NCBI RefSeq assembly: GCF_016432865.1
Contig: NC_067400.1
Coordinates: 611,960,269-612,004,000 of the forward strand
Length of the DNA: 43,732 nt
Source: Antechinus flavipes
Lineage: Eukaryota
Direction of reading: 5' to 3'
Within the stretch, counting starts at the first letter, position 1. Every line of letters begins with the position of its first letter. Below are positions 16,334 to 39,400 of the stretch, piece by piece. The notes beneath the pieces were generated by a model. That model saw nothing but the letters and a program-made list of their open reading frames with translations. It made no database searches and was not told the DNA's origin. The position numbers were made by a program, and so were the translations under genes.

Positions 16334-19300
16334 TCACACGTGGGTCTGAAGGCGCTGGTGGCCAGGAACGGGGATGACCGTGTAGGAATAAGGCGAGGGC
16401 CCCGGAGCCGGGTCAGGGGTTCCGTAGGGGGTGGGTTTGACGTAGCTGGTGAAAGCTCGGGTGTAGGGAGTGGTGAGGTAACCCTCCCGAGGCCGGTAGA
16501 GACCACCCAGGTCTGGGGGGAATAAGGCCAGGTGAGGGGTCAGGTCATAGAAGCCAGAAGGACTGCCCGAGAAGACGGGAGATGCTGGAGAGGAGAACAG
16601 GGCGGCTCCAGGGTCCTGGCTCACACTCACACCTCGAACCTTATAGTAGCCATTAGTGGGATCCTGGGGGGAGATTTTTAAAAAAGGGAAAAATAAAAGG
16701 TGAAGGTTGAAGATGAGGAGCCAGAAAACCAACGGAGATCAAGGGGCCAGCGGAGGCTCACGGAGAGAGAGCTCCGATGTAAGGGGGGGCACGCATGGGC
16801 AAGGCCGAAGCCAGCCACCAGAGCCGCCCCCAACACCTTTGAGGGAGACAGGAAAGCTCCCAGAGATAACAGGGAGACTGGGTGGCGGCTGACAGACCAG
16901 GAGGAGAAACCCGGGGTGACCCAGAGACAGGAGCCGCAACCAGGAGGTCCCTGAACTAAGGTGGAGAAGCTTCTGGCTGGGGCTGGAAATTGGGGGGAGG
17001 GGGCAGGACAACCTTGGCACACTGGAAGGGGAAGCCCGGAGTAGGAGGGCACAGTGGCTGTGCCGGGACAAAGGAGACCAGGGACTGAATGACGGGGTGA
17101 GGGGAGCCCAGGGAAGACTGAGATAGACATGGAAAAAGGAAGCCGGGAGGTGACTGAGGGGGCCCAGGGGGAGGAGGAGCCAGAAGTCATAGACAGAGCC
17201 CACGGGTTCCAGGCCCCGCCCCTCACGGCCCCGCCCACCTTGGACTCAGGCCCCGCCTCTTCGTCGCCCGCGAGATCGTTCTGCTTGGGGAGGGACGTGC
17301 CGGCGGACTCGCTGCTGGGGACCTGGGGGAGGGGTCGGAGCTGTCAGCGGGTGTCCAGGGAGAGGCCCCCGCTAGGCCCCGGGAGCCACCGCCCGCGCCG
17401 CCCCTTCCGGCCCCGAGCTCGCGGGGCTCTCTGGCGCGGTGGGGCGCTCCCTACCCGGGCTTCCCGGCCGCTTTCCTCCTCCTCCTCGGGCGCCCGAGGG
17501 CTGGAACCGTCGCTGTCGGTGATTTGCACTAGTATGTCCCGCTTGGAGATCCTGGCTCTGGAGCCTGAGGGGGGGGGGGAGAAGGCGGAGTTCGAGGGCG
17601 GCACCTCAGAAACAATGGGGGCCTGAGGGGCAGGGATGGGCGGGGGGAGGGGGAAGGGGGGCGACTACACTGACCTCGGCCTCGGCGCCAGCAGCAGTGG
17701 GCGCCCCCCGCGATCAGCAGCAGCAGCAAGGCGGCGGCCGCCGCAGCCACTCCGGCCACGATGCGCACCAGGGGCAGTGGGTCTGGGAGGGGACACAGAG
17801 GTCAGAGTTAGGGGACAGTTTGGGACCCGGGGGGACCCAGCTCGGCTTGGAGGAGCAAGAAGCCTGGCCGAGGCTGGGTGCAAGGGAAGGGTCCTGGGGG
17901 TTCTGGGGTTTGGGGTGCGTCCCTGGGGAGCGGTCTCCAGGGCTGTGGGCGGCCCGGGGGACTTGGGGAATCCGGGGCCCTCCGTGCTCACCACTGCGGG
18001 TCAGGCCAGCCCGGGCTCCGGCCTCGCCCAGGCGGTTGCGAGCGCTGCAGTTGAAGTCCCGGATGAAGTCCGGTTCCCGAGTCCCGGAGATGTGCAGCAC
18101 CGAGACCAGCCCCCGGCGGCCCCCGCGCGGGGCCCCTGGGGCGGGGAATGTCTCCACTAGGAAGCGGCCTCGAGCTCCCGAGGCCAGGGCGCCCTCGCCC
18201 CAGGACCAGACCTGGGCGAGAAGACCGAGTGAGGCTAGGCGAGGGGATCGGAGCTGGGGGGTGGGGGGGCCCAAGGTTCTTCGGGGAAGAGGGGAAACCC
18301 TTACCACCGCGTCGGGGGCTGGAGAGCCGAGCACTAAACACTCCAGCCGGGCAGGGGCTCCCAGGGCAGCCGGGGGCGAATGCAGAGCAGTCACTGCGGG
18401 GGGGCCTGGGAGGGAGGATTCGAGAGCCAATCAGAGACGGCCCCGTCCCTCGCCCTGGCCTATCCCCTCCCTTTCGTCCTGCCCCCCAACCTCTGCTCAC
18501 CATGCACAGTCAGTGTTGCCTCCCCCAGGCCGCCCCCCACTCCTGAGGGGCCTGGCTCCGCTCGACACTCATAATTTCCTGCATCCCCCGGCCCCACAGC
18601 CGCTAGGCGCAACGTGGGCCCCGAGCCCAGGACCTGGGGAGGCATGGGGAAGAGCCATTAGGGGACATGGCAAGGAGGGAAAGAGCTCAACGAGCCCCTC
18701 CCCCCAGGCCCGAGTCCATTACCTTCGTCCCCCCATGGCGGGTCCAGGTCACTCTGGGGGGCGGGTTCCCCTTCCAGGTGCAGGTGAAAGAGGCGTCTTC
18801 CCCCACATCCACTGCCACTGGCTCAGGTGGGGAGAGGAGGAGGGGGCCGACTGAAGGTTAAAGAGAGACTATTAGTAGGACTCAGGCACCCAGACCTCCC
18901 AACCTCCTCCTCCCAGGCACTGGGACTATCCTCCTCCTGCAGATGTATCCCAATCCTATCAGCCGGACCGAGGCCCAGAGACTTCCCCGGGCCTGCAGGA
19001 ACCCTGGCCAACTCTGGCCACTGCCGCCATCCCCAGCTTCTTTAGGGATCTCCCCTTCCCCTCCCCCCACTCACACTGCACATCCAGTGCTGTGCTCCGG
19101 TTGGTACTGCCCACGGCGTTGGTCACCTCGCAGGACACAGGTTCAGTCAGGAAGGAAGCATCAGCTTTTGCCTCCAACAGAGGCCCCCGAGCTCCGGGAA
19201 GCACAGATCCCCCTTTCGCCCACCTGGGGGATAGGAAAGGTCAATACTGGAGAGTCTCAAACATGGGGGGAAGGAGGGGCAGGGAGTCCTGGGACAGTCC

Positions 19301-21182
19301 CATCAGTGGGGGCTGGGAGCATCTGCAGGGGCTCACCTGTAGCCAGTGACTGGGGGATGGGCTGTTGCTCTGCACAGAAAGGTGACCTTCCCACCCTCAG
19401 GCACTGTCTGGGGCTCGGCAGACAGAGTCACCACGGGGGGATCTAGGAGATGGGAAGGGATTGAAGTCAGTAAGAAGGCCGTACCCAGCATCCTTTCCCC
19501 CAGTCAGTGTGCAGAACCCACAAGTCCAGCTCTCACTTACACTGCAGGCTGAGGGTGACTTCAGTCTGTTTGCCCCTGGGCAGGGCTGGGCTCCGGGCCT
19601 GGCAGATGAAGGAGGCGCCATCATCCCGGGCAGAGGGGGTGATTGAGAGAGAGCTCTCCGCTGCTCCCAAGTTCCCGCTGGCCAGCAGGGTCTGGAGGGG
19701 ATGTGGAAGAAAGGATTAGGGGTAGTGACCTCGCTGACCCGCGTGGAGGGGATGGCTTAGTTTATTTCTGATTGGTCCCTCTGCTCCCTCCTCTGCTCCC
19801 TCTTCTCACCATGACCTCCAAACTTTTGCAAAAGTCTCTATGGGGAATTATTTTCCATTCTCTGACCTCCCTATGCTGTGAAGTAAGAGACGGCTCCAGA
19901 TTCTAGTCTGACCTGGCTGTAGCTGGCTCCCTCCAGACGAACACCGTCCCGAAACCAGAGCAGCTCAGGGGTGGGGCGAGCGCCACCTCGGGTCCGGCAG
20001 GTCAGGTTCCCAGGAACCCCAGCAACTAGAGCCACAGTTGGAGCCCCTAGCACCTCGGGTGCTTCTGGGGGAACTGAGGACAGAAGAACAGTGAACCTTC
20101 ATCTCATCAGAGACCCCAGCCTCGGCCTAGCAAGATCAGGAATAGTCGGGGAACAGTGCAGGCAGAAACTTCTTGAGTGACATATGGGGTGGGGGACAGT
20201 CCTTGAATCCCTCAGGACAAACACACGAATTGGGGGTGGGGTGGGGCTGGACATTTGAGTGGGGCCAAATGCCAGAGTCCAGCTGGAAAAGGGGTCAGGA
20301 ATTACCAAGAACTTGGAGCCGAGCCGGCCGCGAGCGAAGGGCAGCCTGGGTAGCCTGGCACTCATAGGAGGCTTCATCCCCAAGTTCAACTGGCCCAATG
20401 TGCAGATCATGGTGGCCACTGGCCCTGTCTCCTGCGATCCAGTATCGGGACCACCCTGGGGAAGGCACAGAATAAAAGGGGCAGGGTTCCTATGTGGAAA
20501 TCCCAGCCCAGGCTTCCTTAATCTCCCTAGCAGAGATGTTCAAGCCCCTAAAGTCGCTCCCGAGGTGGTCCTCACCAGGCAGATCCCGTTCACCCCCTAG
20601 GGCTAAGCCATCCTTTGTCCACTGAACCAAGCCGTGGTAGCCGCTGAGCGCGCAGGGGAGGATGGCCTCCTCCCCCAGGACAACCTCTAGGTCCTCTGGT
20701 TGCTGTGTGAAGTGGGGAGCGTGGCCTGGCGGGGGAGGAGAGAGGAGTCAGAGCTCAGAGAAGCTGAGAAACCCAGCGAGGCTTGGGAATGCCCAGAGCG
20801 CCCCCGAAGGTAGGGGTGGGAGCACAGCTGGAGTCCCGGGGTCTGGGATCCTCCCGCCAGCAGCTTCCTTTGTCCCCAGTCTCTCCGACGAGTTTTTCCG
20901 GAAGGTGACAGAATTCCAGCCCACCAGGACTAAAGCGTCCGGACTCGGCGCCTCCCTTTTATCCTGGAATCCTGGCAGCCTGAGGCGACAAGGAAACTCG
21001 TTTCTGTCCTTCCCTCCCCGAGCCTTGCTCTGAGGGTCTCTCCCACCCCACCAGAAGGGAAAGAACATATGGGGAAACTGAGGCACTGGCCCTCCTCCGG
21101 GCTCCTCCTATCCCATTCCGTCCTGTCCCGTACCTGCACTGCAGCCGAGGAGGAAGAAGAGAAGCGCGCCCAGTGGAAGCAT
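16334..21182 (-). CDS. KIRREL2: Kin of IRRE-like 2 (NEPH3/filtrin), five Ig domains, 709 aa
   Basis: 15 exons: 21134-21182, 20576-20725, 20306-20455, 19913-20073, 19541-19691, 19337-19442, 19075-19223, 18723-18850, 18501-18633, 18305-18405, 17992-18211, 17675-17782, 17455-17564, 17239-17322, 16334-16663, all GT-AG and in phase. Peptides [38 protein letters not shown] and the PDZ-binding end LQTHV match KIRREL2. Confidence 0.96.
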
Positions 21183-24100
21183 CTTCGTGTTCTCGAGCCC
21201 CCCTCAAGTCCTCAAACTTTCTGAGCTAATCGCAGCCCCCCCAAAACGCGCGGCCGCCCACGCCTCTGCTCACTCTGGCCCTGCTCTGCCTCCCCCTTAG
21301 CCCCCAAGGCTGACTCCGTGACCCCTCGGGCTCAAGCGCCTGGAAGCTCCGCTCTCCGGCTTCCTCCTGCCGGGCTCTCGGCTCGCCTGCCGCTCGCTAA
21401 GTCCCCGGGGGCTGGGCCTGGCTCCACACTTAGGCAGCCCTGCTCGGCCCCGCCCCCAGCCGGGCACGCCCCCTCCTCATTGAGAAAACGCTCCTCGAGA
21501 CGAAAATTAAAGAGTGGGGGCTGAGGAGGGAGAGCTTGGGGAGGGAGATGGGGAGGGGGGAGGGGGAGCCACCTGTCGGGAGGGAGGGCAAGGGGAGCCG
21601 TGGCCAGGGGACAGAGGGGAGGGTCCCCACGCAGGACTGGGTTTTAGGGCACCGAACGCCGGGCTCTCGGGTTGGCGCGTGGCCGCTCTTCCGGGCCCGG
21701 GGGGAGGAGTTCGTTCAGTTAGTGGAACAAACTCGCTCAGGCAGGGCCCTGGGGCTCGGAAGCCGAGTCTCCAGGGCTCCCCAAGTGGAAAAGGAGATAT
21801 AAATGTTGCGCTCCTCGGGGACCCAGCCGAGCAGGGGACCGCTGGGACGCGGGGCTATTTTTACCTTGAGAGCAAGGTCAGAGCAGGGTCAGCGGTTTGG
21901 GGGGACACTGAGTCTCGGCGATGGGGGGCCTCCCCGGCGCCAGCCTCCCCCGAGCTGCCAGTCTAATCATGGGGACTACAGGACAAGGCTCTCGCTACTA
22001 AATTCTGCCGAACCTTTTTTTTTTTTTTTAATCGGGAGCCAGGAATCCCGTCCCCCAGACCCCTTTGGGGCCCTTTCTCAGTCATCCACAGGACTAAGCC
22101 GCCCGCCGCTTGTCTCTGGCGGCCGCCCCCCAATCCCTCCACCGCGAGATCCCAGACAGTCCGGTCCCCACACTTCCCTCTGCCTCTTCACTGCCTCCCG
22201 GTCACCCGGGAGACACAAGAGAAGTGGGAGGGGCCGGAGACCAGGAGGCTGGGAACCGAGCAGCTTGTCCTGACGCTTCAATGAGGGTCCCAGCCGCGCG
22301 TTCCCACGAGGGCCAAAGAGGTCCAGGGGCAGCTGGGACAAGCAGGTGGGAGGAAGGGCGCACATCCCTGAGAAATGCCCGCTTCCCACAATCTGCGAAC
22401 AGAAGACCAGACACCTGGGTCCCCAGGAAGAGGGAAACGTGGGGTGGGACGGATGCCTCGGACGCTGGGGCAGCGGAGGGGGATGAGGTGGGGGTCTGGA
22501 CACCTGGGGAGGTTCTGAAGGAGGGTGGGGAGGGGACCGAAAGCCTGGGTCTCTGAGGAGAGACCCAGGCACTCACATGGGAGTGGGGAGGGGGCAAGGG
22601 GGCAGATGCCCCAGGCTCGACTCTGAGAGACGCCATGTCCTGCAGGGTCAGAAATCCGGCCTTAAATCACCCGGCTTCATTGGATTTAGCCACCAATCCA
22701 GATGCCTATCTCAGTAGTACCCCCCCCCCAGCACGCTGCCCGAGGATTTGGGGATCAGCAGACACTAGACATCTGGCTGGATGCCTTGGTTCCCGAGCTA
22801 GCAGGGGCTGGGGAAAGGAGGGCGGTGCAGAGGCTGGAGTAAGGAAACTTGTGAACCAATCTCCCCAGATGCTTTCGCTCCCTGCCCCCCACGATGGAGA
22901 TGGAAAGAGGGAGCGTCTGGGATGAGGCCCTAGGGAGCCAAGTCAGGAAATAAGCCGTTGCTGGGCAAAGGGAAGGAAAATAAAAGTGCTGGGGGTGGAG
23001 AAGTGAAGGGCGGTGGTGAGATGTGATGCAAATCAAAGATGATGAGATTCCTGGCTAAAAGCAAGTATCCCAGACCTCTCTGCTTCTAAGACCCCTGTTC
23101 TAGAACCAAACTACCTTAAGATCTATTGATCTGATCCCCTAGTTCCAAATCCTAGTCCTCCAATCAAACTCCCAAGTCCCCAATACCTTTATGCCCCTTC
23201 CTACCACCCAGTGACCCTGGGGGGAGCCTCCATTTTCCACTTTGGGAGCTTGGATTCTTGCCCTTTAACAGCTCACACAACAGCCCCAAGAGCCCCTGGA
23301 TTCTTTAGAGCTGGCTTCCCTGAAGAGCGAGGCTTAGTGTGACTACAAGACATAAGCAAGGGAAAGGGAACGAGGATTCTGGGAGAGATCCAGAGAGAGC
23401 ACATTAAGAGGGCAAAAATTCTAAAAGAATCAAACATTTGAGACGGAAATCTGAAGGAGCAGTTTGACAGAGGGAAAGTGACATGGAAGGTTTAGAGAGC
23501 TGGAAACTGGGGCTCCCTCTAAAAACAATCTTCTCTCAACAGGGGGTGCTAAAAACCTGGGGAGAAAGTGTTCAGGGACGTGGTGGGAGGAAATTGCCAG
23601 AAGGGGGTAATGGGGGTGCCCAGAGTGATGTGATTGTGTGAGTAAATCTCTGGGAGCTAAAATGAGAGCAGAAGAGGCTTATCCCTTACAAGGGACCAGC
23701 ATATGGTCCAGGAATTAGAGGATGTGGGTAAGGGGAGAGACAGAGGGACTGCAAGAAGCAGTAATATTCATTAGTTAATAGTTAACATTTATTAAACTCA
23801 GAGACCTGAAAAAACTCCCCATTGACCAGGAAGGGACCTGTCAATCACCCTTTTACCCCCTAAGCCCACCACAGGCCTAGAGATCCCATAACACTTTGTG
23901 ATGCCAGTTGAGGTCAGGGAACACAAACTAATACATCTATGATCCCTAAGGAAGTTTACCCTAGGTACTGTGAGAACCACAGATCCCTTTCTATAGCCTA
24001 GATGGAACTCAGAAATACAAGATTTCCCGAGTCCCCATTGGGCCCAGGAGACCCCACAAAAAGACAGCTGATGGTCTTACCTATGATACAACAACCATGT

Positions 24101-24504
24101 GAGACCAAAAGGATCTTATAAACACCAAAGTGATAAACATATATAGTAGGGGGTGCAAAATGCCAGCCAAGCAGCCTAGGTGCTCAGTGGGAACTCAGCA
24201 ATTCCACGGTAAGTCATCTGTGAACCCCCCAGAAATCTCACAGGAAACAATGGAGGAAGCCCCATCTTGTCCCAAAGATGTCATCATAATACTGCTGGAA
24301 GTCCAGCAATCACCCAGAAAAGCCACAAAACTGTCAACTGGGGTCAAATCCTCTATAATAATAGCACCCACTGGGGGGACAGCCGAGTCCTAAATCATTC
24401 AGAGTAATACATTTGTAAGCCCACTGGGAAATCGAGAATCCCATAATAATATCCCTGGGAGATACCAACCGGACCCCAGAGGTTCTAGAATAATTCCCAT
24501 GAAT

Positions 24505-25040
24505 CAATGAAAAAAGCATTTATAGAGTGATTACTGTGTGCCAGGACTTGTGCTAAGCATTAGAGGTAATAGATACAAGACAAGATACTTGCCCTTGTCA
24601 AGTGTTTACAACACATAAAGGGGAGGTGTGAGAAAATAAATGCTCAAGTGATAGGATTCCCAGACAAAACTAAAAAGAATTCCTGCTTTCAAAGAGCTTA
24701 CATTCTCCTGGGCAAGAGAACAACTTGTAAACGAAAACTGTTTACAGTGAATAACAATTTGAGAGGAGAAAGAGTACAACTATTAGGAGACTGGAAAAAC
24801 TTTCCAAAGGAGATGGAAAACACTCAGAAGCTGGACCTTGGAGCTCAATATTCTGAAAGACTTGGGGGAGGAGGAAATACATTCTATGTATTGGGGACAA
24901 CCTGGGTAAAAACATGGAGGTGAGGTGAGAGATTAAAATCTGCGTTTTGGAAAACAAGTAAGCCAGCTTGGCTATAACAAAAATCATGTGAAGGGAGTTG
25001 AGGTGCAATGGCTCTGACAAGGACCCTGTAGGGTCAAGCA
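24505..25040 (-). mobile_element. LINE-2 3' fragment
   Basis: aagcatttatagagtgattactgtgtgccaggacttgtgctaagc... is the typical reverse-complemented L2 3' end, followed by purine-rich decayed L2 body. Confidence 0.55.
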
Positions 25041-25300
25041 CCTTTGTGAACCTCCTATATATTAAAGGATCCTATCAGAAATCCCAGAATATTGGACCAA
25101 AGACAACAAAACTAGTTTTTTGTTTTAAGGTTCCTCATCCCTCCCCCTGTTTTTAAATGGGGAAATGGGGGACGAGGATTGGCAATAATGATGGCAAAAA
25201 AGAAAATGCCCCTCAAGTATTTTTAATGCACAAATGAGAGTGGGAGAAAATTCATCAGTAAGTACAGACAAACAGGAAAATTTTGAAAAATAATATGTTG

Positions 25301-25440
25301 GAGGCAGCTAGGTGGCACAGTGGATAGAGCACCAATCTTGAAATCAGGAGGACTTGAGTTCAAATCTGGTCTCAGACATTTAACTCTTCCTCGCTGTGTG
25401 ACCCTGGGCAAGTCACTTGACCCCAATTGCCTCGGCAAAA
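25301..25440 (+). mobile_element. tRNA-derived marsupial SINE (WSINE1-like) with target-site duplication
   Basis: gaggcagctaggtggcacagtggatagagc...gagttcaaatc...aattgcctcggcaaaa with Pol III A/B boxes. Perfect TSD aaaaataatatgttg at 25286-25300 and 25440-25454. Confidence 0.9.
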
Positions 25441-25629
25441 AAAATAATATGTTGGATTTATACTTTTTAAAAAGTGATCATTGGTTAATTACAATTAGCT
25501 AGACTTAGCCTTTTAAAAAAGCCTTTTAATGTAAACTAACGTTTTCAAATACAATTTTTTTGTATTCTGCTTGCATACATGTAAGTGCTCTGTGTTTAAA
25601 TTCTGAAAAAAAAGTCCAAAAAATTGACA

Positions 25630-27590
25630 GCTGTGTGGAGGATTGGAGAAGTGAGAAAGTGATGACCGACTAATTAGAATGCTATTGCTATAGTTCAGGT
25701 GAAAGGTGAAAAGGATCTGAATTACAGTGCTGACTACTGAGTTAAGAAAACTGATGAGAGATATCTCATGTGGAGGTAAAATCCACAGAATTTGGAAACT
25801 GGATATGGGAATAGAGGGAGAGGAAGAGTTGAGGGTTCCAAAGTTCTATGACCTGAAAAATAATGGTTCCCTCAAGAGAGATGGGACATATAGGGAGGGG
25901 AGTAAGTTTAGGGAAAAAAAGATAAAAGAGGCAGGAGGTAGAAGAGTCTGTGGGGATAGCTAGATGGAGATGGCAAGCAGGCAATTGGTTATGGAGGACT
26001 AGCACACAGAGGGAAATTAAGGTCTGAATATTTAGGAATCTTTGGAGAGAGATAACTGACCCTGTGAGTCGATGAGATCTCCAAAGAAGAATGTGTGGAG
26101 AAGGAAAAAGGGGGGGGGCTCAAGAAAGGGCTTTGGAATTTTTGTACAAACAAAACTAATGCAGACAAGATTAAGAAGGGTAGCAATAAACTGGGAAAAC
26201 ATTTTTACAGTCAAAGGTTCTGATAAAGGCCTCATTTCCAAAATATATAAAGAACTGACTAATTTATAAGAAATCAAGCCGTTCTTCAATTGATAAATGG
26301 TCAAAGATATAAACAGACAATTCTCAAGACTAAGAATTTGAAACTATTTCTAGCCATATGAAAATATGCTCCAAGTCATTATTAATCAGGGAAATGCAAA
26401 TTAAGACAACTCTGAGATACCACTACACACCTGTCAAATTGGCTAGAATGACAGGGAAAGATAATGCGGAATGTTGGAGGGGATGTGGGAAAACTGGGAC
26501 ACTGATACATTGTTGGTGGAGTTGTGAACACATCCAGCCATTCTGGAGAGCAATTTGGAACTATGCTCAAAAAGTTATCAAACTGTGCATACCCTTTGAT
26601 CCAGCAGTGTTACTACTGGGCTTATACCCCAAAGAGATACTAAAGAAGGGAAAGGGACCTGTACGTGCCAAAATGTTTGTGGCAGCCCTGTTTGTAGTGG
26701 CTAGGGCTAGAATTTGGAAAATGAATGGATGCCCATCAATTGGAGAATGGTTGGATAAATTGTGGTATATGAACGTTATGGAATATTATTGTTCTGTAAG
26801 AAATGACCAGCAGGATGAGTACAGAGAGGACTGGCGAGAATTACATGAACTGATGCTGAGTGAAATGAGCAGAACCAGGAGATCATTATATACCTCAACA
26901 ACGATACTGTTTGAGTATGTATTCTGATGGAAGTGGATCTCTTCGATAAAGAGCAAATCTAACTCAGTTTCAATGGATAAATGATGGACAGAAGCAGCTA
27001 CACCCAAAGAAAGAACACTGGGAAATGAATATAAACTGCTTACATTTTTGTTTTTCCTCCCGGGTTATTTTTACCTTCTGAATCCAATTCTCCTATGCAA
27101 CAAGAGAACTGTTCGGTTCTGCAAACATATATTGTATCTAGGATACACTGTGACATATTTAACTTGTATAGGACTGCTTGCCATCTAGGGGAAGGGGTGA
27201 AGGGAGGGAGGGGAAGAGTCGGAATAGAAGTGAGTGCAAGGGATTATATTGTTGTAAAAAAAATTACCCAGACATGGGCTCTGTCAATAAAAAGTTATAA
27301 TAACAAAAAAATTAAGGCCTTTAGGTTACATCCATTTATAGGTGATAGGATATGAATGATGATCCAGCAAAGGGGATAAAAAGAAGAGGTCAAATAGGGA
27401 GAACTAAGATCAGTATTAGAAAAATCTTGGGAGTAAATATATCCAAGGAGGTTTGGTCAGCAGTATCACATATCCCCAAATCGATAGGGAATAAGAAAAA
27501 GTCATTGTATTTAACAATTAGGAGATATGGAGGACTAAAACTAGGAGAATATGGAGGGCTAAAAAACTAAGAAGTTTTAGTTTAGTGGTG
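25630..27590 (-). mobile_element. LINE-2 fragment (25630-26110 and 27310-27590) split by an L1 insertion
   Basis: Purine-rich decayed L2 body on both sides of the L1 (gatgagatctccaaag...; gatgatccagcaaagg...gtcagcagtatcaca...). Confidence 0.55.
26139..27310 (+). mobile_element. 5'-truncated L1 (ORF2 C-terminus, 3' UTR, poly-A)
   Basis: ORF 26358-26927 (LIREMQIKTTLRYHYTP...CWRGCGKTGTLIHCWW...FDPAVLLLGLYPKE...WYMNVMEYY) is the L1 ORF2p cysteine-rich C-terminus, followed by 3' UTR and A-rich tail. Confidence 0.95.
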
Positions 27591-27609
27591 GAGAAGGGAG
27601 CCCTTTTTT

Positions 27610-27845
27610 ATTGTTGTTCAATCCTGTCCACTCCATGACCCCATCTGACTTTCGTGGCAAAGATACTGGGGTGGTTTGCCATTTCCTTCTCCAGATCATT
27701 TACAATTGAGGAAACTGAGTCAAACAGGGTTACGGCACTTGCCCAGGATCACATAGCCAGGAGGTGTCTGAGGCCAATTTTGAACTCAGGAAAATCAGTC
27801 TTCCTGATTCTAGGTCTGCCATTCTATCCACTGTGCCAGCCATTT
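27610..27845 (-). mobile_element. MAR1/MIR-type CORE-SINE
   Basis: gcaaagatactggggtggtttgccatttccttctccag...gaggaaactgag...tttgaactcagg...attctatccactgtgcc. A similar fragment lies at ~35770-35890. Confidence 0.75.
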
Positions 27846-28009
27846 CTGCCAAAGCCATTTATTGAATGCTGGGTACTGCTAAGTGCTTTACAAATATTGC
27901 CTAATTTGATCTTCACAACAATCTTGCAAAGTAAATGCTATTCTGATCCTCGTTTAACAATCAACTAAGGTAGAGGTTAAACAACTAGGCTGTTGCCTAG
28001 GATCACACA

Positions 28010-28375
28010 GATAACAATTAGTGTTATGGAAATTATGAAGGATAAGAAGTAAGATTTAAGAAGCCCCTTCTGGGTAGAAGTAGTGGTCGATGACATGGAA
28101 CTATGAAACTTGGCTTGACCTTTGGGTCCTGTTTTTTCGTATCAGCTTAGATCAATGAGTATGGTAGCAACGTGTTGACCTATTTGTAGATTTGCTAGTG
28201 GGTTTAGTCTATGGAAGATATGTGTAAAATATCCTAGTATGTTTGAGAAGTTATGTGTATGGATTAAGGATTTGATTGGTATTTTGTTTGTTATTATATC
28301 AAGTTCTGTGGCGATTACAATTCCTAGTATGGTTACGATTAGGGCTGAGTTTTGTTAAGGTGGGCATGGTTATTT
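28010..28375 (-). pseudogene. MT-ND5 (NUMT): NUMT: nuclear copy of the mitochondrial ND5 3' end
   Basis: In vertebrate mitochondrial code the minus strand reads MTMPTLTK(frameshift)ALIVTMLGIVIATELDMMTNKMPIKSLIHTHNFSNMLGYFTHIFH*LNPLANLQMGQHVATMLIDLSWYEKTGPKGQAKFHSSMSSTTTSTQKGLLKSYFLSFMISMTLIVI, the ND5 C-terminus. TGA sits at the conserved Trp (28142-28144). Confidence 0.92.
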
Positions 28376-31339
28376 TAGTTTGCAAAGGGTCAAGAAGTGA
28401 GTAGGATATGAAGAAGGAATATAAGCTATTTTTCCTAAGACTGGCATTGAAAAAAGAAGTATGGAAGCCGATAATTTGAGGGGATTGCAGGACTAAGTGA
28501 AAAACCATTGGTGTCGTGACAAATATAGAAATATGTTTAAACGAACTGCACAGATTTAACATATCAGATTGCTTGCTGTCTTGGGGAGGAGGAAGATGAG
28601 GGAGAAAAATTTGGAACACAAAGTCTTTTAAAAAATGAAATGTTGATATTTAACATGTATTGGACTACCTGTCAAGATGATTGGGGGGGGGGGGAGAAGG
28701 GGAAAATTTGCAATAAAAGGTTACATAAGGGTCAATGTCAGGAAAATTACTCATGCATATGTTTTGTAAATAAAAAGCTTTAATAAAAAAGGAATGTTGA
28801 AAATTACCTTTACATATATTTGCGAAAATCAAAAAAGTATTGAAAATTTTAAAAAAGAGAAAAAAATTGAACACTGTTGGCATCTTCTCATTGCCTCTGG
28901 GATAAGATGCAAAATTTAAGGCTCTTGATAGTTTGTCTTCAGGGAAGGTAATGTAGTGAGATGGAAAGAATATTGTATTTGGAGTCAGGAGAGTTAGGTT
29001 CAAGTTCTAGATCAACTATTACTGTGATGTTGAATTTGTCAATTAAAATGAATTTTTAAAAGCATTTATTAAACAGTTATGATGTGCAGTGCTCTGAGGA
29101 TACAAATAGAAAAAAAGACAAGAGCTTCTATTCTAATGGTATCACAACATATATATAAGGTTTCCATTTTGAATCAAATGGAAAGGTCCCATAATCCTTA
29201 GGGTGCAGCAGCAAATTGGAAATTTAAATAAAGGTGGCATTTCATACCATTTCTGATAAAAACCAAGTTTCGATTTGGCAGTGTCTGGGACTTGGGTAGC
29301 AAGCATTTCCTTTGCAGTCTTCACTTGCGGGGGGAGCAGCTGCTAGACTTCAGCTCCGAGGGATAGCCAGCTAGAACGATGGCTGAGAGCACTGTGCTAG
29401 AAGCGATACTATTGCCAATAGTCCCAGGTCAGGGTCCTGGGGTTTGAGGGGACATGGCAGTCAAGGTTTGACTTGGCACAAGCTATCATCTGTCTCTCCC
29501 TTGGGGCAAGTAACAATCTTTTTACAAAATCACTAAATCTGAAAGTTGGAAAGAAATTCAGGGGTCATCTAGGCTATCAAGAAAATAATAGCTGTTATAA
29601 TAGCTGACAAGTGGTTGTCTGAGGCCTGTTTGAAGGCCTCGAAAGCAGAGGAACCTATCACTTCTTCAGGGAGGTCATTCTACTTTTGAACATCTTCACT
29701 CATTAGGCATTTTTTTTTTATGATTATAAAGAGGACTGGGCCTGTTTTTTCCTGATGTATCAGGAGACTCTCCCCTGAACCAGTATGTAATTCAAAGTGA
29801 ATGGGGATGTAATGGGCAAGTGGCGTAAGGACCCAGTCTTTACAAGCATGTGCAGAATGCTCAGGTGATGCAATTCCCACATGGACTTTGGAGCATGTAC
29901 AGACATTCTATAACTAGTTCTGGTCTGCTGACCTCATGGTGAAAAAGAGCCTCTTCAATTGGCCACAGCTTCCTAGCCAGAAACGGGGATGTATTTAAAA
30001 TAGATTAGTTCAACTCATTTCTTTTTTCAACATCTCCCTGTTGGAATTTCCAGCCTGCTGGTTCCAAGGAGAAAAAAGAAACAGTGCTAATGTAAGGGGA
30101 TGTGCCAAGGGCTCTACCCAGCTAATGTTGACCTATGGTCAGTAAATACACGTTCTGAGTTCTGTGGAAGAATATTAAAAACCTTTTCCATTCAAATGAA
30201 AATATTCATAATGTTTTTTCCAAGCTAAAAACTCGTTTCTCTTTTAAGATCCCATTAAAAGGACCCTAAGGTAACAGACCAAAGTCTAGGAAATAGATAA
30301 AAAGCTTTAATCAAGCCTCTCATCTTGCCTACCCATCCCCTGAAATGATTGATATCACCATCCCCTTAAGGGCAGTGTCTTCTTTTTCATTCAGTAATTG
30401 AGTTATTGGATCAAAGGAAGCTCTCTTAGTCCTCAGGGAGTGATCAAGGAAAGAAATGGAGAAAATGACTGTTTTGGGAGTGTTAACCTAAAACTGTATC
30501 TAACATATGATCTTTTCCTTGTTCAAGAATCCTACAAATATTATTTTTAAACCATCTCAGAAGGCACAGGGGGAACTATGCCAGTTAGGATCTTTCTATT
30601 ATCTAGGTATGATTTGAATATAGAATAATGTGAAAGTTTGTTCTTCAGACTTGTGCCTAAAGTTCACAATAGTAATTTCTTTTTATCTGTGACAATTCTT
30701 TGTTTCTATCTTTTTTTTTTTAATTTTAAGTAAAGGATATTGGAGGATACGGTTCTGTGAATCTCAAAACATTAAGAGATCCAGTTGCCAGTAGGTTCAG
30801 GAGTGATGCTCATGCTGGAATTTACAATTAGCTTTGAGGTCTAAGGAAGCAATCTTTCAGGACCCGGGACAGCAATATTTGAGAGAAGAGATTGGCCAAT
30901 CCACTATTAGAGTAGCAATGCTACTACTCTAGGCCTGAACTTGGTGGAATTAATGTTATGTAGAAACTGCATTAAGATTGAGCCCACTCACCCCAGAGAC
31001 TAAGATGGTAGAGGTGCCAGTTTGCCCCTGAAATATTGAGAAGAAAATTTTGTATTTCTGTTCTTGGTAATGATTAAATGGAAGTACGGTACCAGTATCT
31101 GATGGCTAACAGGAGGGAACCACATCAGGCTTTGAGCTCCAGTCCATAGGACTAGAGAAGAGACATCCCAACCTCTCCAGGAAACCCCTAGAAATTGGAA
31201 AAGATGTACCCAGCTATCTCTGGTTGGGCAAAGGAAGCTCTCTCAATCTTTAAGGAGTGGTCAAGGAAGGAATTTAAACGACTGTTTTTGGAGAATTAAC
31301 CCCAAACTGCACCAGAAATCTCAACATTTGCATCAAGTC

Positions 31340-33400
31340 TAAATTTGGTACTTTGTAGTTCCCATCCACTGTTCCTTGTTTTCCTTTCTATGGCAAAACA
31401 GAATAAATTTCCTCCTTTCACAAAATACTTTCAAATACCTGAAGGCAACTCCTCTCATGTTTTCCTGTGTAAATCAAGCCCAGTTCCTTCAGTCACAGAG
31501 TCATGATGACCCTTTTGCCACAACACTCCAGGATTAGAACTGACAAAAGCAGGGAACAATTTTCTATAGTTTCCCTATTCCTAGAAGCTATGTCTCCCCT
31601 TAAAGCGCACCAATACTGCCTTTGCTTTTGTGGCTACCACAGCACTTATACTGGCTTTAAAGTCCACTAAAACCTTCAGATCTTTTTCTGAACAACTGCT
31701 ATCTTTCTGTGCTTATCCATCATCTACTTGTGAAATAGATATCTAAGTGCAAGGCTTTTAATTATATCTCTATTTTCAACATCTTCAATTTGGACCAATG
31801 CTTATCAAGATTCTTTTGGAACGTTTTTCTTCCCGGGTTATTTTTACCTTCTGAATCCAATTCTCCCTGTGCAACAAGAAAACTGCATCTGCAAACATAT
31901 ATTGTATCTAGGATATACTGCAACATATCTAACATATATAGGACTGCTTGCCATCTAGGGGAGGAGGTGGAGGGAGGGAGGGGAAAAATCAGAACAGAAG
32001 CGAGTGCAAGGGATAATGTTGTAAAAAAAATTACCCTGGCATGGATTCTGTCAATATAAAGTTATTATTAAATAAAAGAAAAAAAAGATTCTTTTGGAAC
32101 TTGATTTTGTCTTCCTCTCCAGCTATCCCTCCCAGCTTTACATTATCTGTGAATTTGGCAAACTTATCATATGTAGCTTTGTCAAGTTATTGATCAAGAT
32201 GCTAAAATAGCACAGACCTCTCATCTATTTATATTCATTAAATTCTATTTCCTAATTTTAATGATTTTTAAAAACTTCTATAGAAGTCATCTGAACTCTG
32301 ATCCTTAAGAGTAACTTGACTTGTTCAAGTGGTTACATTTCTCTGATCTTGATGTTCACTTTTTCCATTTCAGATTCACTTGGGAAAGTACCATGAGACA
32401 TTTTAATTTGGGCTATAAGTGATTTCATTCTGCCACACCATCCAACATATGGTAGATGGGCTGGTGGATGACCTAGCCTTGAGTTCAATCTTGAATTTGA
32501 AGTTTTTCTGTCAATAAAAAAGCAAAATTACACTTAGAAATAAATAGGCTTTTGAAATTAGGAAAAAAACCAAAATAGCATGGAACCAAGCAGAGGTTCC
32601 TATGGTTCCCTACTGGAAACCTCTCGCCACGCTGGTGCTAAACAATACTTGGAAGCCTGCTATCCAAACAACTCTATCGGGATGTCTTATTATCGAATCC
32701 ATAGTCCTCCATCTTTTCAAGAAAAGTTAAATGATTGCTCCAGCATCCTTCTCATCCATTATTTTCATCCCAACCCTTTCCAAAAAGGAAATGCGGCTGT
32801 CTGAGTGGGATTTGAACTCAGGTCCTCCTGACTCTATCGCTGAAGCACTGTCTAGCTGTCCCAATGTGAAATGTTTTTGATGAAACGAAGCTGATTCTTT
32901 GCAAGGTTGTTTCTGTTTTTGACGCTTGCCATTCACATCTTCAGTGGAGAATTTTCCCAGGAATCTAAGTGAAGTTGACTGGCCTCCAGGCTGTAGATTG
33001 TTTTCTTCCCTTTTGTATTTGTTGGGACATTTTTCCTCCCCCAGTTTGGGGGTCTCTCATTTTCTGTGATCTTTCTGCTATCGCTGTGGCCAGGTCTTTC
33101 ACAATCCAGGGATTTATGTCATTCATCAGTGCCAGGAGACTTGAATTCACGGAGAACAGTGAGGTGCTATCTTTCACTGTCTCCTTATCTTGGGTATCGA
33201 TTCCTTATCCCTTTTTGTTGTGTCATTTCCAGTATAAAAGTCATTTTCCTTTGCAGAGAAAACAAAGAACTGAGCAGCTCTATTTTCTCTTTGTCATCAG
33301 TTATCATCACCCGTTCCGCCCGAAGCAAAGGTCCTGTCCTTTTTGATTCTCCTCACCCACCCCGACATAATGGGACTCAGTTGAAAGAGATGGACTAAGC
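31340..33400 (-). mobile_element. Fragmented CR1/L3 LINE, interrupted by younger inserts
   Basis: Decayed RT-region motifs on the minus strand: VMITDDKEKIELLS (~33260-33310), INPWIVKDLATAIAE...KGRKQSTAWRPVNFT (32965-33177), GVPQGSVLGP-like (~32580-32615), FINDL/FADDTKLGG-like (~32130-32220), and L3 3' sequence 31340-31760. Further pieces at ~33570-33740 (+) and 34150-34310 (-). Confidence 0.75.
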
Positions 33401-34530
33401 AGACTTAGGTGGCAGGGCCTGTCCGGGCACTTGGCAGGTGTCCCCCGTGACGACAATTGAGGTGCTGCCCTACAATGAGAACTGTCCATACTTGGCTCCC
33501 TTTCTCCTTTCTGCACTCCGAGAAGCAGGTTCTCACTTCATTAACTAAAGTAACCAGATGGCAAAATGCTCAATCCCACAGCTAAGTGTTTTCATCAGCA
33601 CATTATCTAGTGCGCACGTACGGGCTTTGCCAAGGCTAGTGTAGTTTCATGACTTATCACAGGACACCATCTCACAAGCTCTTAAGACTACTCCGGATAG
33701 ACGTGTGCTTTGGAACATACAAAACTGGCTGTGATTCAGTTTTTATTTAGGGATAAGTGAAGAGAAAAATGGGACACTGTTCTGAAATATCAAATATCAA
33801 GGGAGTCCTTGATTAGTTGAGTTCCCTAGTTCACTTGTTGAAGTTATAGTTTTTCATGTATTGCTTGCCATCTAGGGGAGGGGGTGGGGAGGAAAAGAGA
33901 AAATCTGCAACACAAGGGCCAATGTTATCAAATTATCCATCATATTTTGAAAATAAAAAGCTTTATAAAAAAGAAATTATAGTTTTTGAGTGTACCCATT
34001 TGCAAAACGCTTATATGGTAGATGGGCTGGTGAATGACCTACCATGTGCGCTGAGTTTAATCTTTGTGTAAATTTTCAAATTCGAGATTTTTCTGTCTGC
34101 CAATAAAAATGTAAAATCACACTTTAGAAAGACTTTTAAAGTTAGAAAAAAAATAAAGCACAGGACCCAGCACAGATGCCTACGGTTCCCCATTAGAAAC
34201 CTCTGGCCACGCTGGCGCCAAACAATACTTGGAACCTAACAATCCAGACAACACTGATTCTATCTGAATGTCTCATTATTGAATCCATAGTCCTCCATCT
34301 TCTTCTCAAGGATGAGATACTAACAATTAATTGCTCCTTCCTCCTCTTTCTCCCTCTCTCCATCTCGCCTCCAACATAAAACTAGATTATTTTGATTTGA
34401 CTTTTGTACCTGCCCATCTCCATTCTGACCACCATTTCCCAACACATAGGCAATCCACAACATGACGACACACCCTTTTTCATACAAGGAAACAAAATTC
34501 TGGTTTGCTGGTTAAATGTTATTTGGTTGT

Positions 34531-34690
34531 GGGCAACTGGGTGGCGCAGTGGGTAGGGCACCAGCCCTAAAGTCAGGAGGACCCGAGTTCAAATCTGACC
34601 TCAGACACAATACTTCCTAAGCTGTGGAAGCAAGTCACTTAACCCCAGTTGCCTTAGCAAAAAAAATAAAAAATAAGTAAAATAAAATAA
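34531..34690 (+). mobile_element. WSINE1-like SINE
   Basis: gggcaactgggtggcgcagtggg...gagttcaaatctgacctcagacac...gccttagcaaaaa. Degenerate TSD aaatgttatttggttg / aagagttacttggttg. Confidence 0.85.
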
Positions 34691-36316
34691 GAGTTACTTG
34701 GTTGACAAAGTCAATAGGCTACTCTGCTTACAATTTAGCTTTCCTCATCCTTGTAGATTTTACTCAAACTGGTATCTAAAAGTGGATTATTTTCATTTAC
34801 AACTCGTTTTGCCAAATGCTTTTCCCTCCATCCAAAGAAAGTAAAATTACATTTTCAATGGCCTTCATCTTGAGAACATCCCAGTAAAATATCATAGGGG
34901 AGGATAGGAGAGGAGAGACATGGTACTCTAGAGTTACACATTTTAGATTGCTGAAGGTTATTATAGGATTTTGAAGATAAAAAATCCTTTTTGCTCAAAT
35001 TTAATTACATGAGTTAGTATTTACATTCTACCATTAAAAAACACAATGTATATTTTTAAAAAGTTATTTGAGTAGAGTTTTTTTTTCCTTCTGTTTTCTA
35101 AATCTGGTGGTAGAAAGATTCTTCAAGGGCAAAGGAAGACAAAACTTAAGGATCTGGGAAATGTACATGTCGCCAAGCATTTTTCTACCTTCCAATGGCT
35201 TCCCGGTGCAAACTTCTGGGAGAAGGCAGATGCTGTCACGAGCAGGTTTTACGTTCTGCCTCTCTACTATTTTCCCCCTTCACAAATTCCCCGTTTAAGT
35301 CACCTCTCCAAACTTGGCATTCTATCTCCAGAAATACTTCTCACCAAGGTGTGATGGGTAAGGTGTCCTAGGTGAAGACTTCTCTGATCTCCTTCCTCCC
35401 GTTGTCAGTTTTCTTCCATTTCCCCAAATGACCTTGCAGTACATTTGGCACACAGTTTGTATTTGCCTCTTCCCCTGCCCCTGATAGAGTGTGAGCTTTT
35501 GCAGGACAGGGGACGTCCTCCTTCCTGGAATAATCCAGGAATATAAAGTGATTTTCACCGAAGAAGTTCTTGATCAGTGTTGAATTCAACTGAGCTTATC
35601 TGGATCTCGAGATTCTACGATAGAACATAGGGTCTCGCAATCATATAATGACAGTTAGGAGCTTGAGGGCTTCGTATAATAGTTCTCTAAAGTCCCACCC
35701 CGTTCTACACAATCATAGTCTTATGAACCCACTATCAACCTTTGTTTTCAGTCATGTGTTCAATTGCATCTTAACTGTTTTTTTGGCAGAGTGTGATTTG
35801 CCATTTCATCTTCCCATTCATTTTACAAATGAGGAAACTGAGGCAGGAAGGGTGACGTGACTTGTCCAGGGTCACACAGTTAGTGACTAAACTCATGCTG
35901 TTATGGGTCCCCCCTGACTCTTACCTTGGTCCTGAGATTGAAACAGCCTTTCTCCAATGAACCCAGCCAGAGGACCATAGGGTCTGTCTTTGGCTCTGCT
36001 CCTCCCCCTCCTTTGACCGTAGTATTTGAGGTCCAGGATTCTCATTCCTCCACCATTCTTACTGATCTTTAACAAGGCAACTAAAGCTGGGAATAGACTG
36101 TCATAATGATGCCCGAATCAAGGGTTGTTCTTCCAAGTTCAGGCTACTTTCCTAAAGAGTTATATAGATATGGGAAGAGAAAGGGCTCATGGGTAGCTTC
36201 AGGACTGCTGTCCGGTCCTACCAGCATGTAATAAATAGTTCAATCCAGCATAGAAATCTGGGAACGTATTGCCCCTAAGAATTCTAGGTCTCCTCCCCTG
36301 CCCCCCATCCCAAACT

Positions 36317-36350
36317 TGAACTCTGCCCCAAGTCTGGTTAATGAGTTACC
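36317..36350. promoter_or_regulatory. HNF4-like DR1 and HNF1-like site in PRODH2 proximal promoter
   Basis: TGAACTCTGCCCC 36317-36329 (reverse GGGGCAGAGTTCA) and GGTTAATGAGTTACC 36336-36350, 140-175 nt upstream of the ATG. Confidence 0.5.
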
Positions 36351-36492
36351 CATCCCCTATCCGCCCACCAAGGAGCCACTGACCCCAACTGTGCTCCCCT
36401 CAGTTAATTGGTCATATGCCATCTGAGAGGTGGTTCCATTGATTGCCCTAAGGCTCCCTTCTGTTGAGGCTCGAGTCTGGGATTCAGGCCGA

Positions 36493-39400
36493 ATGCTTCG
36501 AAGGGGCCGACTGCTACTGTCCCGGGGGGTTTCCCAGCTGCAGGGTTCAGGAGCCCAGAGGCCCGTTTTGCGGTTTGATGGAGAAGCTTTCCGTCTCAAA
36601 AGGACGGGGGAACTAGTCCGGGCTTTGCTGGTGCTTCGGCTCTGCGCGTGGCCCCCGTTGGTCACTCATGGTCTGACGGTGAGTGTCCTTTGCTCCGGCC
36701 TTGGGGTCGGCCCAATTCCGATTCTAAAATGGTTCTGCAGTTCTTTTCTGCTTGTAATTCTCTCTTTCCTCCTTCCTGTCGCCTAGCTTCTCTCTTGGTC
36801 TCGGAGGCTCCTGGGTTCCCGGCTCTCTGGGGCTCTACTCCGGGCTTCGGTGTATGGGCAGTTTGTGGCCGGGGAGACCACGGCCGAGGTGCAGGACTCT
36901 GTGCAGAGGCTCCAGGGACTGGGGCTGCGGCCCCTGCTGGCTGTGCCCATTGAGGAGGAGCCGGGGACGGATCGGGGAGGGTGAGAACGTGGATCCGGGG
37001 AGGGGGAAACGGAGGGTGGGGCTGGACAGTAAAAGCTGCAGGGGGGGGGGGGCAGCAGGATCCTGACAACTCAGCGTCTCTTTCTGGTCTGCAGAGAAGC
37101 CTGGTACGAGGGCAACCTCCACGCCATGCTGCACTGTGTGGACCTGTCCTGCGGGCCCCCGGACTCCCCGCAATCCCAGCCAGTGCTCATGCAGCTCAAA
37201 GTGACCGCCCTGACCAGTGCCCTCCTCTGTGTAAGAGAGCTGAGATGGGGAGGGGGTCCTGGGCCTAAAGCCGACTCCCTGAACCATGTGCCCCCTTGCT
37301 CATTTCAGAAGGAACTGACGCTCAGGCTCGGGGAGCCCCACACCGCCAAGGAGCTGAGTCCCGAAAGGCTAGCTGCCGCCATGGAGAGCGGTGAGGTGAG
37401 CGTCTCCAAGCACCCGTTGGCCCCCAGCGCTTGGGGACATCTCCCTGAAGCCCCCGAACCTGAGCTCTGCTCTCCCTCAGGACCTCGGGATTTCCAGTCT
37501 CAGTTCTGAGCAGAACCAGCATCTCGGAGCCTCCCTGAACCGCTTCCACCGCATCGCTCAGGTAGCCTCGAGCCTCAGTCCCAAGATCCGAGCTCGGGCC
37601 CAGTCCTCCTCCCACCCGTGGCCTCCTCCCGGCCCGGCCCCTCCTGACCGCCCCGCACTCTCCCCCTCCACAGTACGCCCGGAGCCGGGGGGTGCGGCTG
37701 CTGGTGGACGCCGAGTACACGTCTCTGAACCCGGCCCTGTCCCTGTTCGTCTCCTCCCTGGCCCAGCGCTGGAACTGCCCGGAGGCGGCGGGCGGGGATG
37801 GGACCCCCTGGGTGTGGAACACCTACCAGGCCTATCTGCAGGTAGTTCCGGGAGCCACGGAGGAGCGGGGGTGGTGGGAGCCGGCGGGGGTCCGGTGGGA
37901 GCGGGCGGGGACCTCACGCCTTCTCCGCCCCCCAGGACACGCACGAGCGGCTGACCCAGGCAGCGGAGGAGGCAGCGCGCAAAGGCCTGGGCTTTGGGGT
38001 GAAGTTGGTCCGCGGCGCCTACCTGGAGAGCGAGCGGGCGCTGGCCCGGCAGAGGGGGGCGGCGGACCCCACCCAGCCCGACTACGAGGCCACCAGCCGA
38101 AGGTAGGGGGGACGGAAGGGGGGGGATTTGGGAGGGCGGCGCCCCCGGGGAAGGGCCCGGCTCTGCCGGCGGCTCCCGTGTCTCCCTCTCCCTCTTCCCC
38201 TTCTCCCAGTTACAGCCGCTGCCTGGAGCTGATGCTGGGACACGTTGGCCGCCGGGGCTCACGGTGTCAGCTCATGGTCGCTTCCCACAATGAAGAGTCT
38301 GTGCATCAGGCGGTCAAAAGGTAAAGTGGGGGGTGGGGGGGGCCGGGAGTGTCCCCACGGAGGGGACAAGAGCAAAGACGAGGGGCTTGGAGACTCCGAC
38401 ACTGGGGGGGGGGGGAGGCTGCAGAGGTGACCATTTCAATCCCCTTATTTCAAGGGGGAGAGAACTGGTCCAAGATGCTTCAAGGATCCCCAAGCTTTCT
38501 GGGAGGAAGTGGCAGATCTAAAGATTAGGCTGATCTCTCCATCACATCAAGAGAGAGATCTAGGATTCAGGGAAAATGGGTGCAGCTCTTCTGGCCCGTG
38601 GGCGCCTTCCTCACCCGACTGCATCGGGATATTCGGTGTAAGGGAAGGAAGCTGGACTGACCTGGCTCAGGGGCCACAGACATTCCTAGAGCTGGCAAGC
38701 CACAATTACGTCATTGAACCTCCCCAGTCTCAGTTTGCTCATCTGTAAAACGGGTACAATCTGTTGTCCTTACCCCAAAAGGTTGTTGTAAGGCTCAAAT
38801 GAGATCCTGTGGCTCTTTTGTTAATATTTTTGGGACTTGACTTTTCTGTAACTGAGTCTCAGTCGGCCCAGCCAATGTGATTGGTACCTGTCAGTGCATG
38901 GCTCCGTACTGGGCGCTGGAGAGTCAAAGACAACAATGAACTAGTCTCTGCCAGCGAGGGGCGCGTGTTCTTGGGGGGCATAAAACACGTTCACAGATGG
39001 AACACAAAAGCCAGAGGGGGAAGAGAGAATGGGGAAGTGAGGGCAGCGAGAAAAGCTCGTACAGACTAGGGAGGCGAGGCAGGCCTTGGGGACCGGCCCG
39101 GGTGGGCGAGTCGAGCTGGAGAGGCGCGGTAAGAGAGAAAGCTCGGTGACGTCCGGGGCTGGATGGTGGGAGGGACAACCCCCCCACCTTGCCCGCAGGA
39201 GTGCTCTCCCTCTCCCAGAGCGTGTGCCCAGGGGAACGAGGCAGGCCCACGCTAAGCCGTGTCCCCGGTGCCCAGCAGAGCCCCCACAGTGTTTATTGGA
39301 GGATATTAACCTTGCTCTCCAATGCCACAGGATGTCTGACCTGGGCATTCCCCCGGACGGGCCCGTGTGCTTCGGACAGTTGCTGGGCATGTGCGACCAC

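What the first reader, a model, noticed from the sequence alone, without database searches (positions are those of the whole stretch)
21183..36492. Nephrin (NPHS1) is absent from its usual slot between KIRREL2 and PRODH2
Established: in human and mouse the order is PRODH2-NPHS1-KIRREL2-APLP1-NFKBID-HCST, with the 29-exon NPHS1 head-to-head with KIRREL2 on a shared bidirectional promoter. Nephrin is essential for the podocyte slit diaphragm. Seen: every other gene of the block is intact and in the same relative orientation, but the 15.3-kb gap has no Ns and is largely filled by L1, L2, CR1, SINEs and a NUMT. I found no Ig or FN3 exon and no nephrin-like peptide in it by eye or in the ORF track. 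Inference: NPHS1 was relocated (more likely, given its essentiality) or lost in this marsupial lineage, uncoupling the NEPH3/nephrin gene pair.
Basis: partly seen in the sequence, partly recalled or inferred. Interest (0 to 1): 0.75.

Follow-up and report, generated by a model that had tools for sequence, protein, structure and literature searches.

The report
Nephrin missing from its usual slot
In the yellow-footed antechinus genome assembly, the kidney-filter gene nephrin (NPHS1) is absent from its ancestral place between KIRREL2 and PRODH2, but I could not establish whether it moved, was lost, or was dropped by the assembler.

Summary
The window is Antechinus flavipes chromosome 3 (GCA_016432865.2). 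KIRREL2 (16337-21183, minus strand) and PRODH2 (36493-39760, plus strand) are intact. The 15.3 kb between them has no N.

No nephrin exon was found:
- None of 298 six-frame pieces hits an Ig or FN3 Pfam model. The same scan detects the KIRREL2 exons and the exons of a real dog nephrin gene.
- Dog and bat nephrin 5' exons score no better on the interval than on its reversed sequence.

Similarity to the eutherian KIRREL2 promoter runs to about 22.7 kb. Beyond that, 13 kb of AT-rich sequence carries marsupial SINEs, L1 tails, MIR fragments and an ND5 NUMT.

Dog, horseshoe bat, human and lizard all place NPHS1 next to KIRREL2, so the antechinus state is derived. It looks like one block was removed, not a gene that decayed in place.

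- I could not obtain a full nephrin protein, a marsupial KIRREL2 locus or sequencing reads.
- Relocation, true loss and assembly dropout therefore all remain open.
- Whether other marsupials share this state is also unknown.

The scan has no other note on nephrin in this genome.

The parts
16337..21183 (-). KIRREL2 (NEPH3) gene, intact, five Ig domains, C-terminal ...THV
   Evidence: tblastn of pangolin KIRREL2 P0003 shows collinear matches at 50-78% identity. Ig_3, I-set and C2-set_2 Pfam hits. Tail exon translated.
21135..21183 (-). KIRREL2 exon 1: ATG at 21183, signal peptide, then a GT donor
   Evidence: Read directly from the sequence.
21184..23000 (.). CpG-rich KIRREL2 upstream zone, the retained half of the former shared intergenic region
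   Evidence: GC is 0.61-0.69 and CpG observed/expected is 0.62 at 21184-22200. It falls to 0.30 at 22.7-23.1 kb and 0.08 at 23.1-24 kb.
21446..21487 (.). Conserved non-coding block 1, matching dog L001 9708-9745
   Evidence: blastn, 81% over 42 nt, collinear with the other two blocks.
22244..22308 (.). Conserved non-coding block 2, about 1.1 kb upstream of the KIRREL2 ATG
   Evidence: blastn, 80% to dog (E 3e-9) and 79% to horseshoe bat (E 2e-8), about 0.9 kb upstream of KIRREL2 in both.
22645..22699 (.). Conserved non-coding block 3, the last detectable similarity to the eutherian KIRREL2 upstream region
   Evidence: blastn, 77% over 56 nt to dog L001 8681-8733. Nothing nearer to dog nephrin (L001 below 8681) matches.
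23000..36400 (.). AT-rich, repeat-laden spacer occupying the place where NPHS1 would be
   Evidence: GC 0.35-0.47. No Ig or fn3 hit. No match to dog, bat or echidna flanks except MIR-like repeats. NCBI calls no gene in its last 10 kb.
25297..25447 (+). Marsupial tRNA-derived SINE copy. Related copies at 34526-34669 (+), 27797-27838 (-) and 32809-32849 (-).
   Evidence: the repeat finder families D4 and D9 and inverted pairs I1 and I3.
27050..27310 (+). L1-like 3' end with an A-rich tail. A second copy lies at 31823-32077.
   Evidence: the repeat finder families D1, D2 and D6, 85-98% identity. 86.7% by megablast.
27980..28354 (-). NUMT: C-terminal part of mitochondrial ND5
   Evidence: Pfam NADH5_C, E 1.2e-13 and 7.2e-10, profile positions 67-180 of 181. 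GC skew +0.43 at 28-29 kb.
35819..35879 (.). MIR-like core fragment. Another lies at 27699-27757.
   Evidence: Matches many copies in the echidna locus at about 80%. Family D5.
36493..39760 (+). PRODH2 (hydroxyproline dehydrogenase) gene, intact, 461 aa
   Evidence: tblastn of A. flavipes XP_051844924.1 (P0280) is 100% in exon matches. Gene call at L006 10001-13271, which equals window 36493-39763.

Best explanation
In Antechinus flavipes, NPHS1 was removed from between KIRREL2 and PRODH2 as a single block. One break lies in the old KIRREL2-NPHS1 intergenic region, just beyond 22.7 kb. The other lies near the old 3' end of NPHS1. KIRREL2 keeps its own promoter. The repeat-rich spacer that normally separates NPHS1 from PRODH2 now joins the two neighbours.

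Shown: there is no nephrin exon here, the flanking genes are intact, and the ancestral state had NPHS1 in this slot.

Inferred: because nephrin is needed for the podocyte slit diaphragm in every mammal tested, a working copy most likely lies elsewhere in the genome. That would make this a relocation, by excision and reinsertion or by duplication followed by loss of the original copy.
For: No Ig or fn3 hit in 298 six-frame pieces, with working controls on KIRREL2 and on dog nephrin. Nephrin 5' exons from dog and bat score at the level of the reversed-sequence null.

Three collinear conserved blocks tie 21.4-22.7 kb to the KIRREL2-proximal part of the dog and bat intergenic region. Nothing matches the nephrin-proximal part. 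GC and CpG content decline gradually across 22.2-24 kb, as at a natural CpG-island edge, not as a sharp step.

The 13 kb spacer is similar in size and make-up to the AT-rich, L1-filled 10 kb upstream of vampire-bat PRODH2. The ancestral order is seen in dog, horseshoe bat, and lizard and human.

The assembly is long-read based (100x PacBio, contig N50 51.8 Mb; PMC9290055), and the GC-rich neighbouring genes are complete.
Against: No copy elsewhere was seen. Relocation rests only on nephrin being essential in other mammals, and birds show that a vertebrate kidney can work without it (PMC3278613, PMC4290089). The 3' nephrin exons (transmembrane and cytoplasmic) were never tested against the spacer.
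Confidence: 0.45

Rival explanations
1. True loss. NPHS1 was deleted in the antechinus lineage, or deeper in dasyurids or marsupials, and no functional copy exists. The slit diaphragm is then built without nephrin, as in birds.
For: The absence is clean, with no relics. Birds set a precedent by lacking nephrin (PMC3278613; PMC4290089). No held paper mentions nephrin in any marsupial. Another conserved gene about 32 kb away, U2AF1L4, is reported dead in this genome (note s1-192113).
Against: Nephrin loss is lethal in humans and mice (established knowledge). In birds the partner KIRREL2 and neighbouring genes are missing too, whereas here KIRREL2 is intact and conserved. Absence elsewhere in the genome was not tested.
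Confidence: 0.2
2. Assembly artefact. NPHS1 really lies in this slot, but the wtdbg2 long-read assembly skipped it, joining repeat-rich sequence on either side.
For: The assembly was built with wtdbg2 from noisy PacBio reads (PMC9290055). The spacer holds repeat pairs, such as the L1 tails at 27050 and 31823 and several SINE copies, that could seed a false join. No independent reads could be laid on the region.
Against: The window has no N and shows no abrupt change in composition. The neighbouring genes, at 60-70% GC, are complete, so there is no GC-driven dropout here. Coverage was 100x with contig N50 of 51.8 Mb. The repeat pairs are only 85-87% alike over about 260 nt.
Confidence: 0.2
3. 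Old pseudogene in place. NPHS1 decayed where it stood, and its exons are now too eroded and too broken up by repeat insertions to recognise.
For: Repeats fill the interval. The 3' exons were not tested.
Against: The interval is 15.3 kb, and after subtracting the KIRREL2 promoter zone it is only about the size of the normal NPHS1-PRODH2 spacer, leaving little room for the full NPHS1 gene (the first 6.3-6.7 kb alone in dog and horseshoe bat hold only its 5' Ig exons). Not one of the many Ig exons scores above the null on either strand.
Confidence: 0.05

Closest known systems
Absence of nephrin (NPHS1) and NEPH3 (KIRREL2) from bird genomes (Volker et al. 2012, PMC3278613; Lovell et al. 2014, PMC4290089)
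   Same: An amniote lineage in which NPHS1 is not found at the conserved NPHS1-KIRREL2-APLP1 block.
   Different: In birds KIRREL2 and APLP1 are listed as missing together with NPHS1, as a syntenic block. Here only NPHS1 is absent, while KIRREL2, APLP1 and PRODH2 are intact and adjacent. In birds absence was claimed genome-wide. Here only the slot was examined.
Head-to-head NPHS1-KIRREL2 gene pair of eutherians (dog L001, horseshoe bat L005)
   Same: KIRREL2, its upstream conserved blocks and APLP1 downstream are arranged as in dog and bat.
   Different: The partner gene and the nephrin-proximal 2 kb of the 3.3-3.7 kb intergenic region have no counterpart in antechinus.
U2AF1L4 unitary pseudogene in the same antechinus region
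   Same: A lineage-specific change to a conserved gene of the same chromosome 19q13.12-like block.
   Different: That gene is reported as still in place, broken and transcribed. NPHS1 has left no trace in place.

Membership tests
Lineage-specific gene loss | Gene absent from its ancestral syntenic position while the flanking genes are retained | tested here: met
   no exon; flanks intact; ancestral order.
Lineage-specific gene loss | No intact copy anywhere else in the genome, reads or transcriptome | not testable with these tools
   Only this window and L006 of the genome are readable.
Lineage-specific gene loss | Same absence in related species, showing a real and datable event | tested here: inconclusive
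   Wombat and opossum show no gene call within 10 kb upstream of PRODH2. The vampire-bat locus also lists nothing there, and its listing may be incomplete.
Gene relocation (positional change of an intact gene) | Gene absent from the ancestral slot | tested here: met
   Same evidence as for the first row.
Gene relocation (positional change of an intact gene) | Intact orthologue at a new locus | not testable with these tools
   There was no access to the rest of the assembly and no nephrin protein id.
Assembly gap or misjoin | Run of N, or an abrupt junction, at the suspect place | tested here: not met
   No N. GC and CpG decline gradually over 22.2-24 kb.
Assembly gap or misjoin | Long reads or independent assemblies disagree with the reference | not testable with these tools
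Unitary pseudogene in place | Recognisable exon relics, collinear, on the expected strand | tested here: not met
   Pfam scan of both strands. Dog and bat nephrin 5' exons score at the null level. The 3' exons were not tested.

The most novel reading that the evidence does not exclude
Antechinus, and perhaps all dasyurids or all marsupials, has no nephrin gene at all. That would make it the first mammal known to build a glomerular filter without nephrin, an independent parallel to birds, but with KIRREL2 retained.
Probability: 0.15. Interest if true: 0.9.

Novelty: new member of a known kind. Interest (0 to 1): 0.45.

Why it matters
Nephrin is the core protein of the podocyte slit diaphragm, and its loss causes lethal congenital nephrosis in humans and mice. 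NPHS1 and KIRREL2 are thought to share a bidirectional promoter.

If nephrin merely moved, antechinus is a natural experiment. It would show that each gene can be regulated without the other, and it narrows the KIRREL2 promoter to the retained 1.5 kb with its three conserved blocks.

If nephrin is really gone, a mammal joins birds in filtering blood without it. That would reopen the question of what nephrin is indispensable for.

If it is an assembly dropout, that is a caution for gene-loss claims drawn from this reference genome.

Tried and rejected
1. Getting a full-length nephrin. The one search of protein representatives went on the KIRREL2 tail exon and returned only 5 hits, all KIRREL2. 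The pangolin KIRREL2 query returned 120 eutherian KIRREL2 proteins, with no nephrin and no marsupial. The length window of the search for homologous proteins cannot reach 1,240 aa from single exons. The protein-atlas search gave cluster names only, with no ids.

2. Getting a marsupial KIRREL2. An alignment of pangolin KIRREL2 with the antechinus exons (A4) was mis-stacked by MAFFT, so I did not use it as a query.

3. Marsupial synteny through PRODH2. Marsupial PRODH2 ids were obtained.

4. The 10 kb flank upstream of PRODH2 proved uninformative. The vampire-bat locus also lists no gene call there, and its listing may be incomplete.

5. Echidna. The 1,300-aa gene next to PRODH2 looked like a possible nephrin by size, but it is ARHGAP33 (RhoGAP).

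Only scripts on the closed machine used them.

I replaced it with coordinates taken from tblastn matches.

8. Literature. No held paper links nephrin or NPHS1 to any marsupial. The antechinus genome paper has no supplement held. Miner 2012 is not held.

9. Other scans. Rfam, tRNA and tandem-repeat scans of the interval found nothing relevant. Earlier findings of this scan hold no other nephrin note.

KIRREL2, PRODH2 and nephrin exons were searched one at a time by reference.
Full report
**What the window is.** The 43,732-base window has no N. A locus fetched with the Antechinus flavipes PRODH2 protein (P0280, XP_051844924.1) is 100% identical to window 26493-43732 over 17,240 bases. This places the window on CM028219.1 (chromosome 3) of GCA_016432865.2, at about 611.96-612.00 Mb.

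**The flanking genes.**
- KIRREL2 is on the minus strand. Its ATG is at 21183, followed by a signal peptide and a GT donor.
- Its exons follow down to 16337, in order, at 50-78% identity to pangolin KIRREL2. The last exon ends in ...THV.
- APLP1 (APP_N, APP_Cu_bd, APP_E2, APP_amyloid) and an ankyrin-repeat gene (NFKBID) lie beyond KIRREL2. HCST was not verified.
- PRODH2 runs from 36493 to 39760 on the plus strand. A TEX14-like gene follows it.

**Is any nephrin exon in 21.2-36.5 kb?**
- I cut both strands into stop-to-stop pieces, 148 on the plus strand and 150 on the minus strand, and scanned each against Pfam.
- No Ig, I-set, C2-set or fn3 model matched at E<=1. The only real hit was NADH5_C.
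- The same procedure on the KIRREL2/APLP1 region found Ig_3 in six pieces, down to 2.7e-9.
- On the first 6.7 kb of a real dog nephrin gene it found C2-set_2 in seven pieces and Ig_3 in six. Intact nephrin Ig exons would therefore have been seen.
- I then used nephrin's own 5' exons, taken by reference from dog (L001) and horseshoe bat (L005).
- Their best tblastn scores on the interval (24.6 and 23.1 bits) equal those on the reversed interval (24.3 and 21.6 bits). The merely paralogous KIRREL2 exons reach 37-39 bits.
- Nephrin's transmembrane and cytoplasmic exons could not be tested.

**What the interval holds.**
- 21.2-23.0 kb is the CpG-rich upstream zone of KIRREL2. CpG observed/expected is 0.62, fading to 0.08 by 23.1-24 kb.
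- Three short blocks (21446-21487, 22244-22308, 22645-22699) match the dog KIRREL2 upstream region in collinear order. The middle block also matches the bat.
- In dog these blocks lie 0.3-1.3 kb from KIRREL2. The remaining 2 kb towards nephrin has no counterpart in antechinus.
- From about 23.0 to 36.4 kb the GC content drops to 35-47%. The sequence there holds marsupial SINE copies, two L1-like tails, MIR-like cores and a 375-base ND5 NUMT.
- Nothing upstream of PRODH2 exon 1 aligns to vampire bat or echidna except MIR.
- NCBI calls no gene in the last 10 kb of the interval.

**Polarity.**
- Dog and horseshoe bat have nephrin (1,295 and 1,242 aa, Ig plus fn3) head-to-head with KIRREL2, 3.3 and 3.7 kb apart, with APLP1 downstream.
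- The supplement of Lovell et al. 2014 lists NPHS1, KIRREL2 and APLP1 as consecutive genes on one lizard scaffold and on human chromosome 19 (PMC4290089).
- The antechinus arrangement is therefore derived.
- In vampire bat the 10 kb upstream of PRODH2 is AT-rich and full of L1. The antechinus spacer resembles the normal NPHS1-PRODH2 spacer.
- This suggests that one block, the NPHS1 gene plus about 2 kb of its promoter side, was removed.

**What I could not settle.**
- Whether nephrin lies elsewhere, is lost, or was skipped by the assembler needs the rest of the genome or the reads.
- I never obtained a full nephrin or a marsupial KIRREL2 protein.
- Gene calls in wombat and opossum show nothing within 10 kb upstream of PRODH2. 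The vampire-bat locus shows the same, and its listing may be incomplete.
I did no reads work and sent no letters from those two stretches to any search tool afterwards.
- The assembly is 100x PacBio built with wtdbg2, with contig N50 of 51.8 Mb (PMC9290055). That makes a dropout unlikely but not impossible.
- No held paper mentions nephrin in a marsupial.
All exons were searched singly by reference.

**Verdict.** My estimates are:

| Explanation | Probability |
|---|---|
| Relocation | 0.45 |
| True loss | 0.20 |
| Assembly dropout | 0.20 |
| Decay in place | 0.05 |

The closest known case is birds, which lack nephrin together with KIRREL2 (PMC3278613; PMC4290089). Here KIRREL2 is kept. A single whole-genome tblastn would decide the matter.

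Noticed in passing
window 40700-42900: Between PRODH2 and the TEX14-like gene lies a G-rich stretch (GC skew +0.27 to +0.39) of degenerate repeats of roughly 29-30 nt, at 60-80% identity. Tandem Repeats Finder missed it. It looks like an old, decayed minisatellite.
   Followed up: partly
window 27980-28354 (-): A small NUMT carries the C-terminal third of mitochondrial ND5 (Pfam NADH5_C, E 1e-13). It is embedded among SINE and L1 fragments.
   Followed up: yes
L004 1206-3508 and 17147-24874 (echidna): In echidna a COX6B gene sits 6.5 kb upstream of PRODH2, and ARHGAP33 lies tail-to-tail downstream. Synteny is therefore also broken at the PRODH2 5' boundary in a monotreme. That boundary may be a reused breakpoint.
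   Followed up: partly
window 22244-22308: A 65-nt non-coding element about 1.1 kb upstream of the KIRREL2 ATG is about 80% identical in dog and horseshoe bat at a similar distance. It is a candidate KIRREL2 regulatory element that has outlived the loss of the neighbouring nephrin gene.
   Followed up: partly
window 17996-18430 (-): The two exons of the fifth KIRREL2 Ig domain are joined by an in-frame, stop-free intron, giving one 145-aa open piece. A gene caller could read straight through it.
   Followed up: no
L003 1-10000 (vampire bat): The 10 kb upstream of bat PRODH2 is 35-43% GC with long L1-type open frames. A repeat-rich spacer on this side of PRODH2 is therefore not peculiar to the marsupial.
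   Followed up: partly
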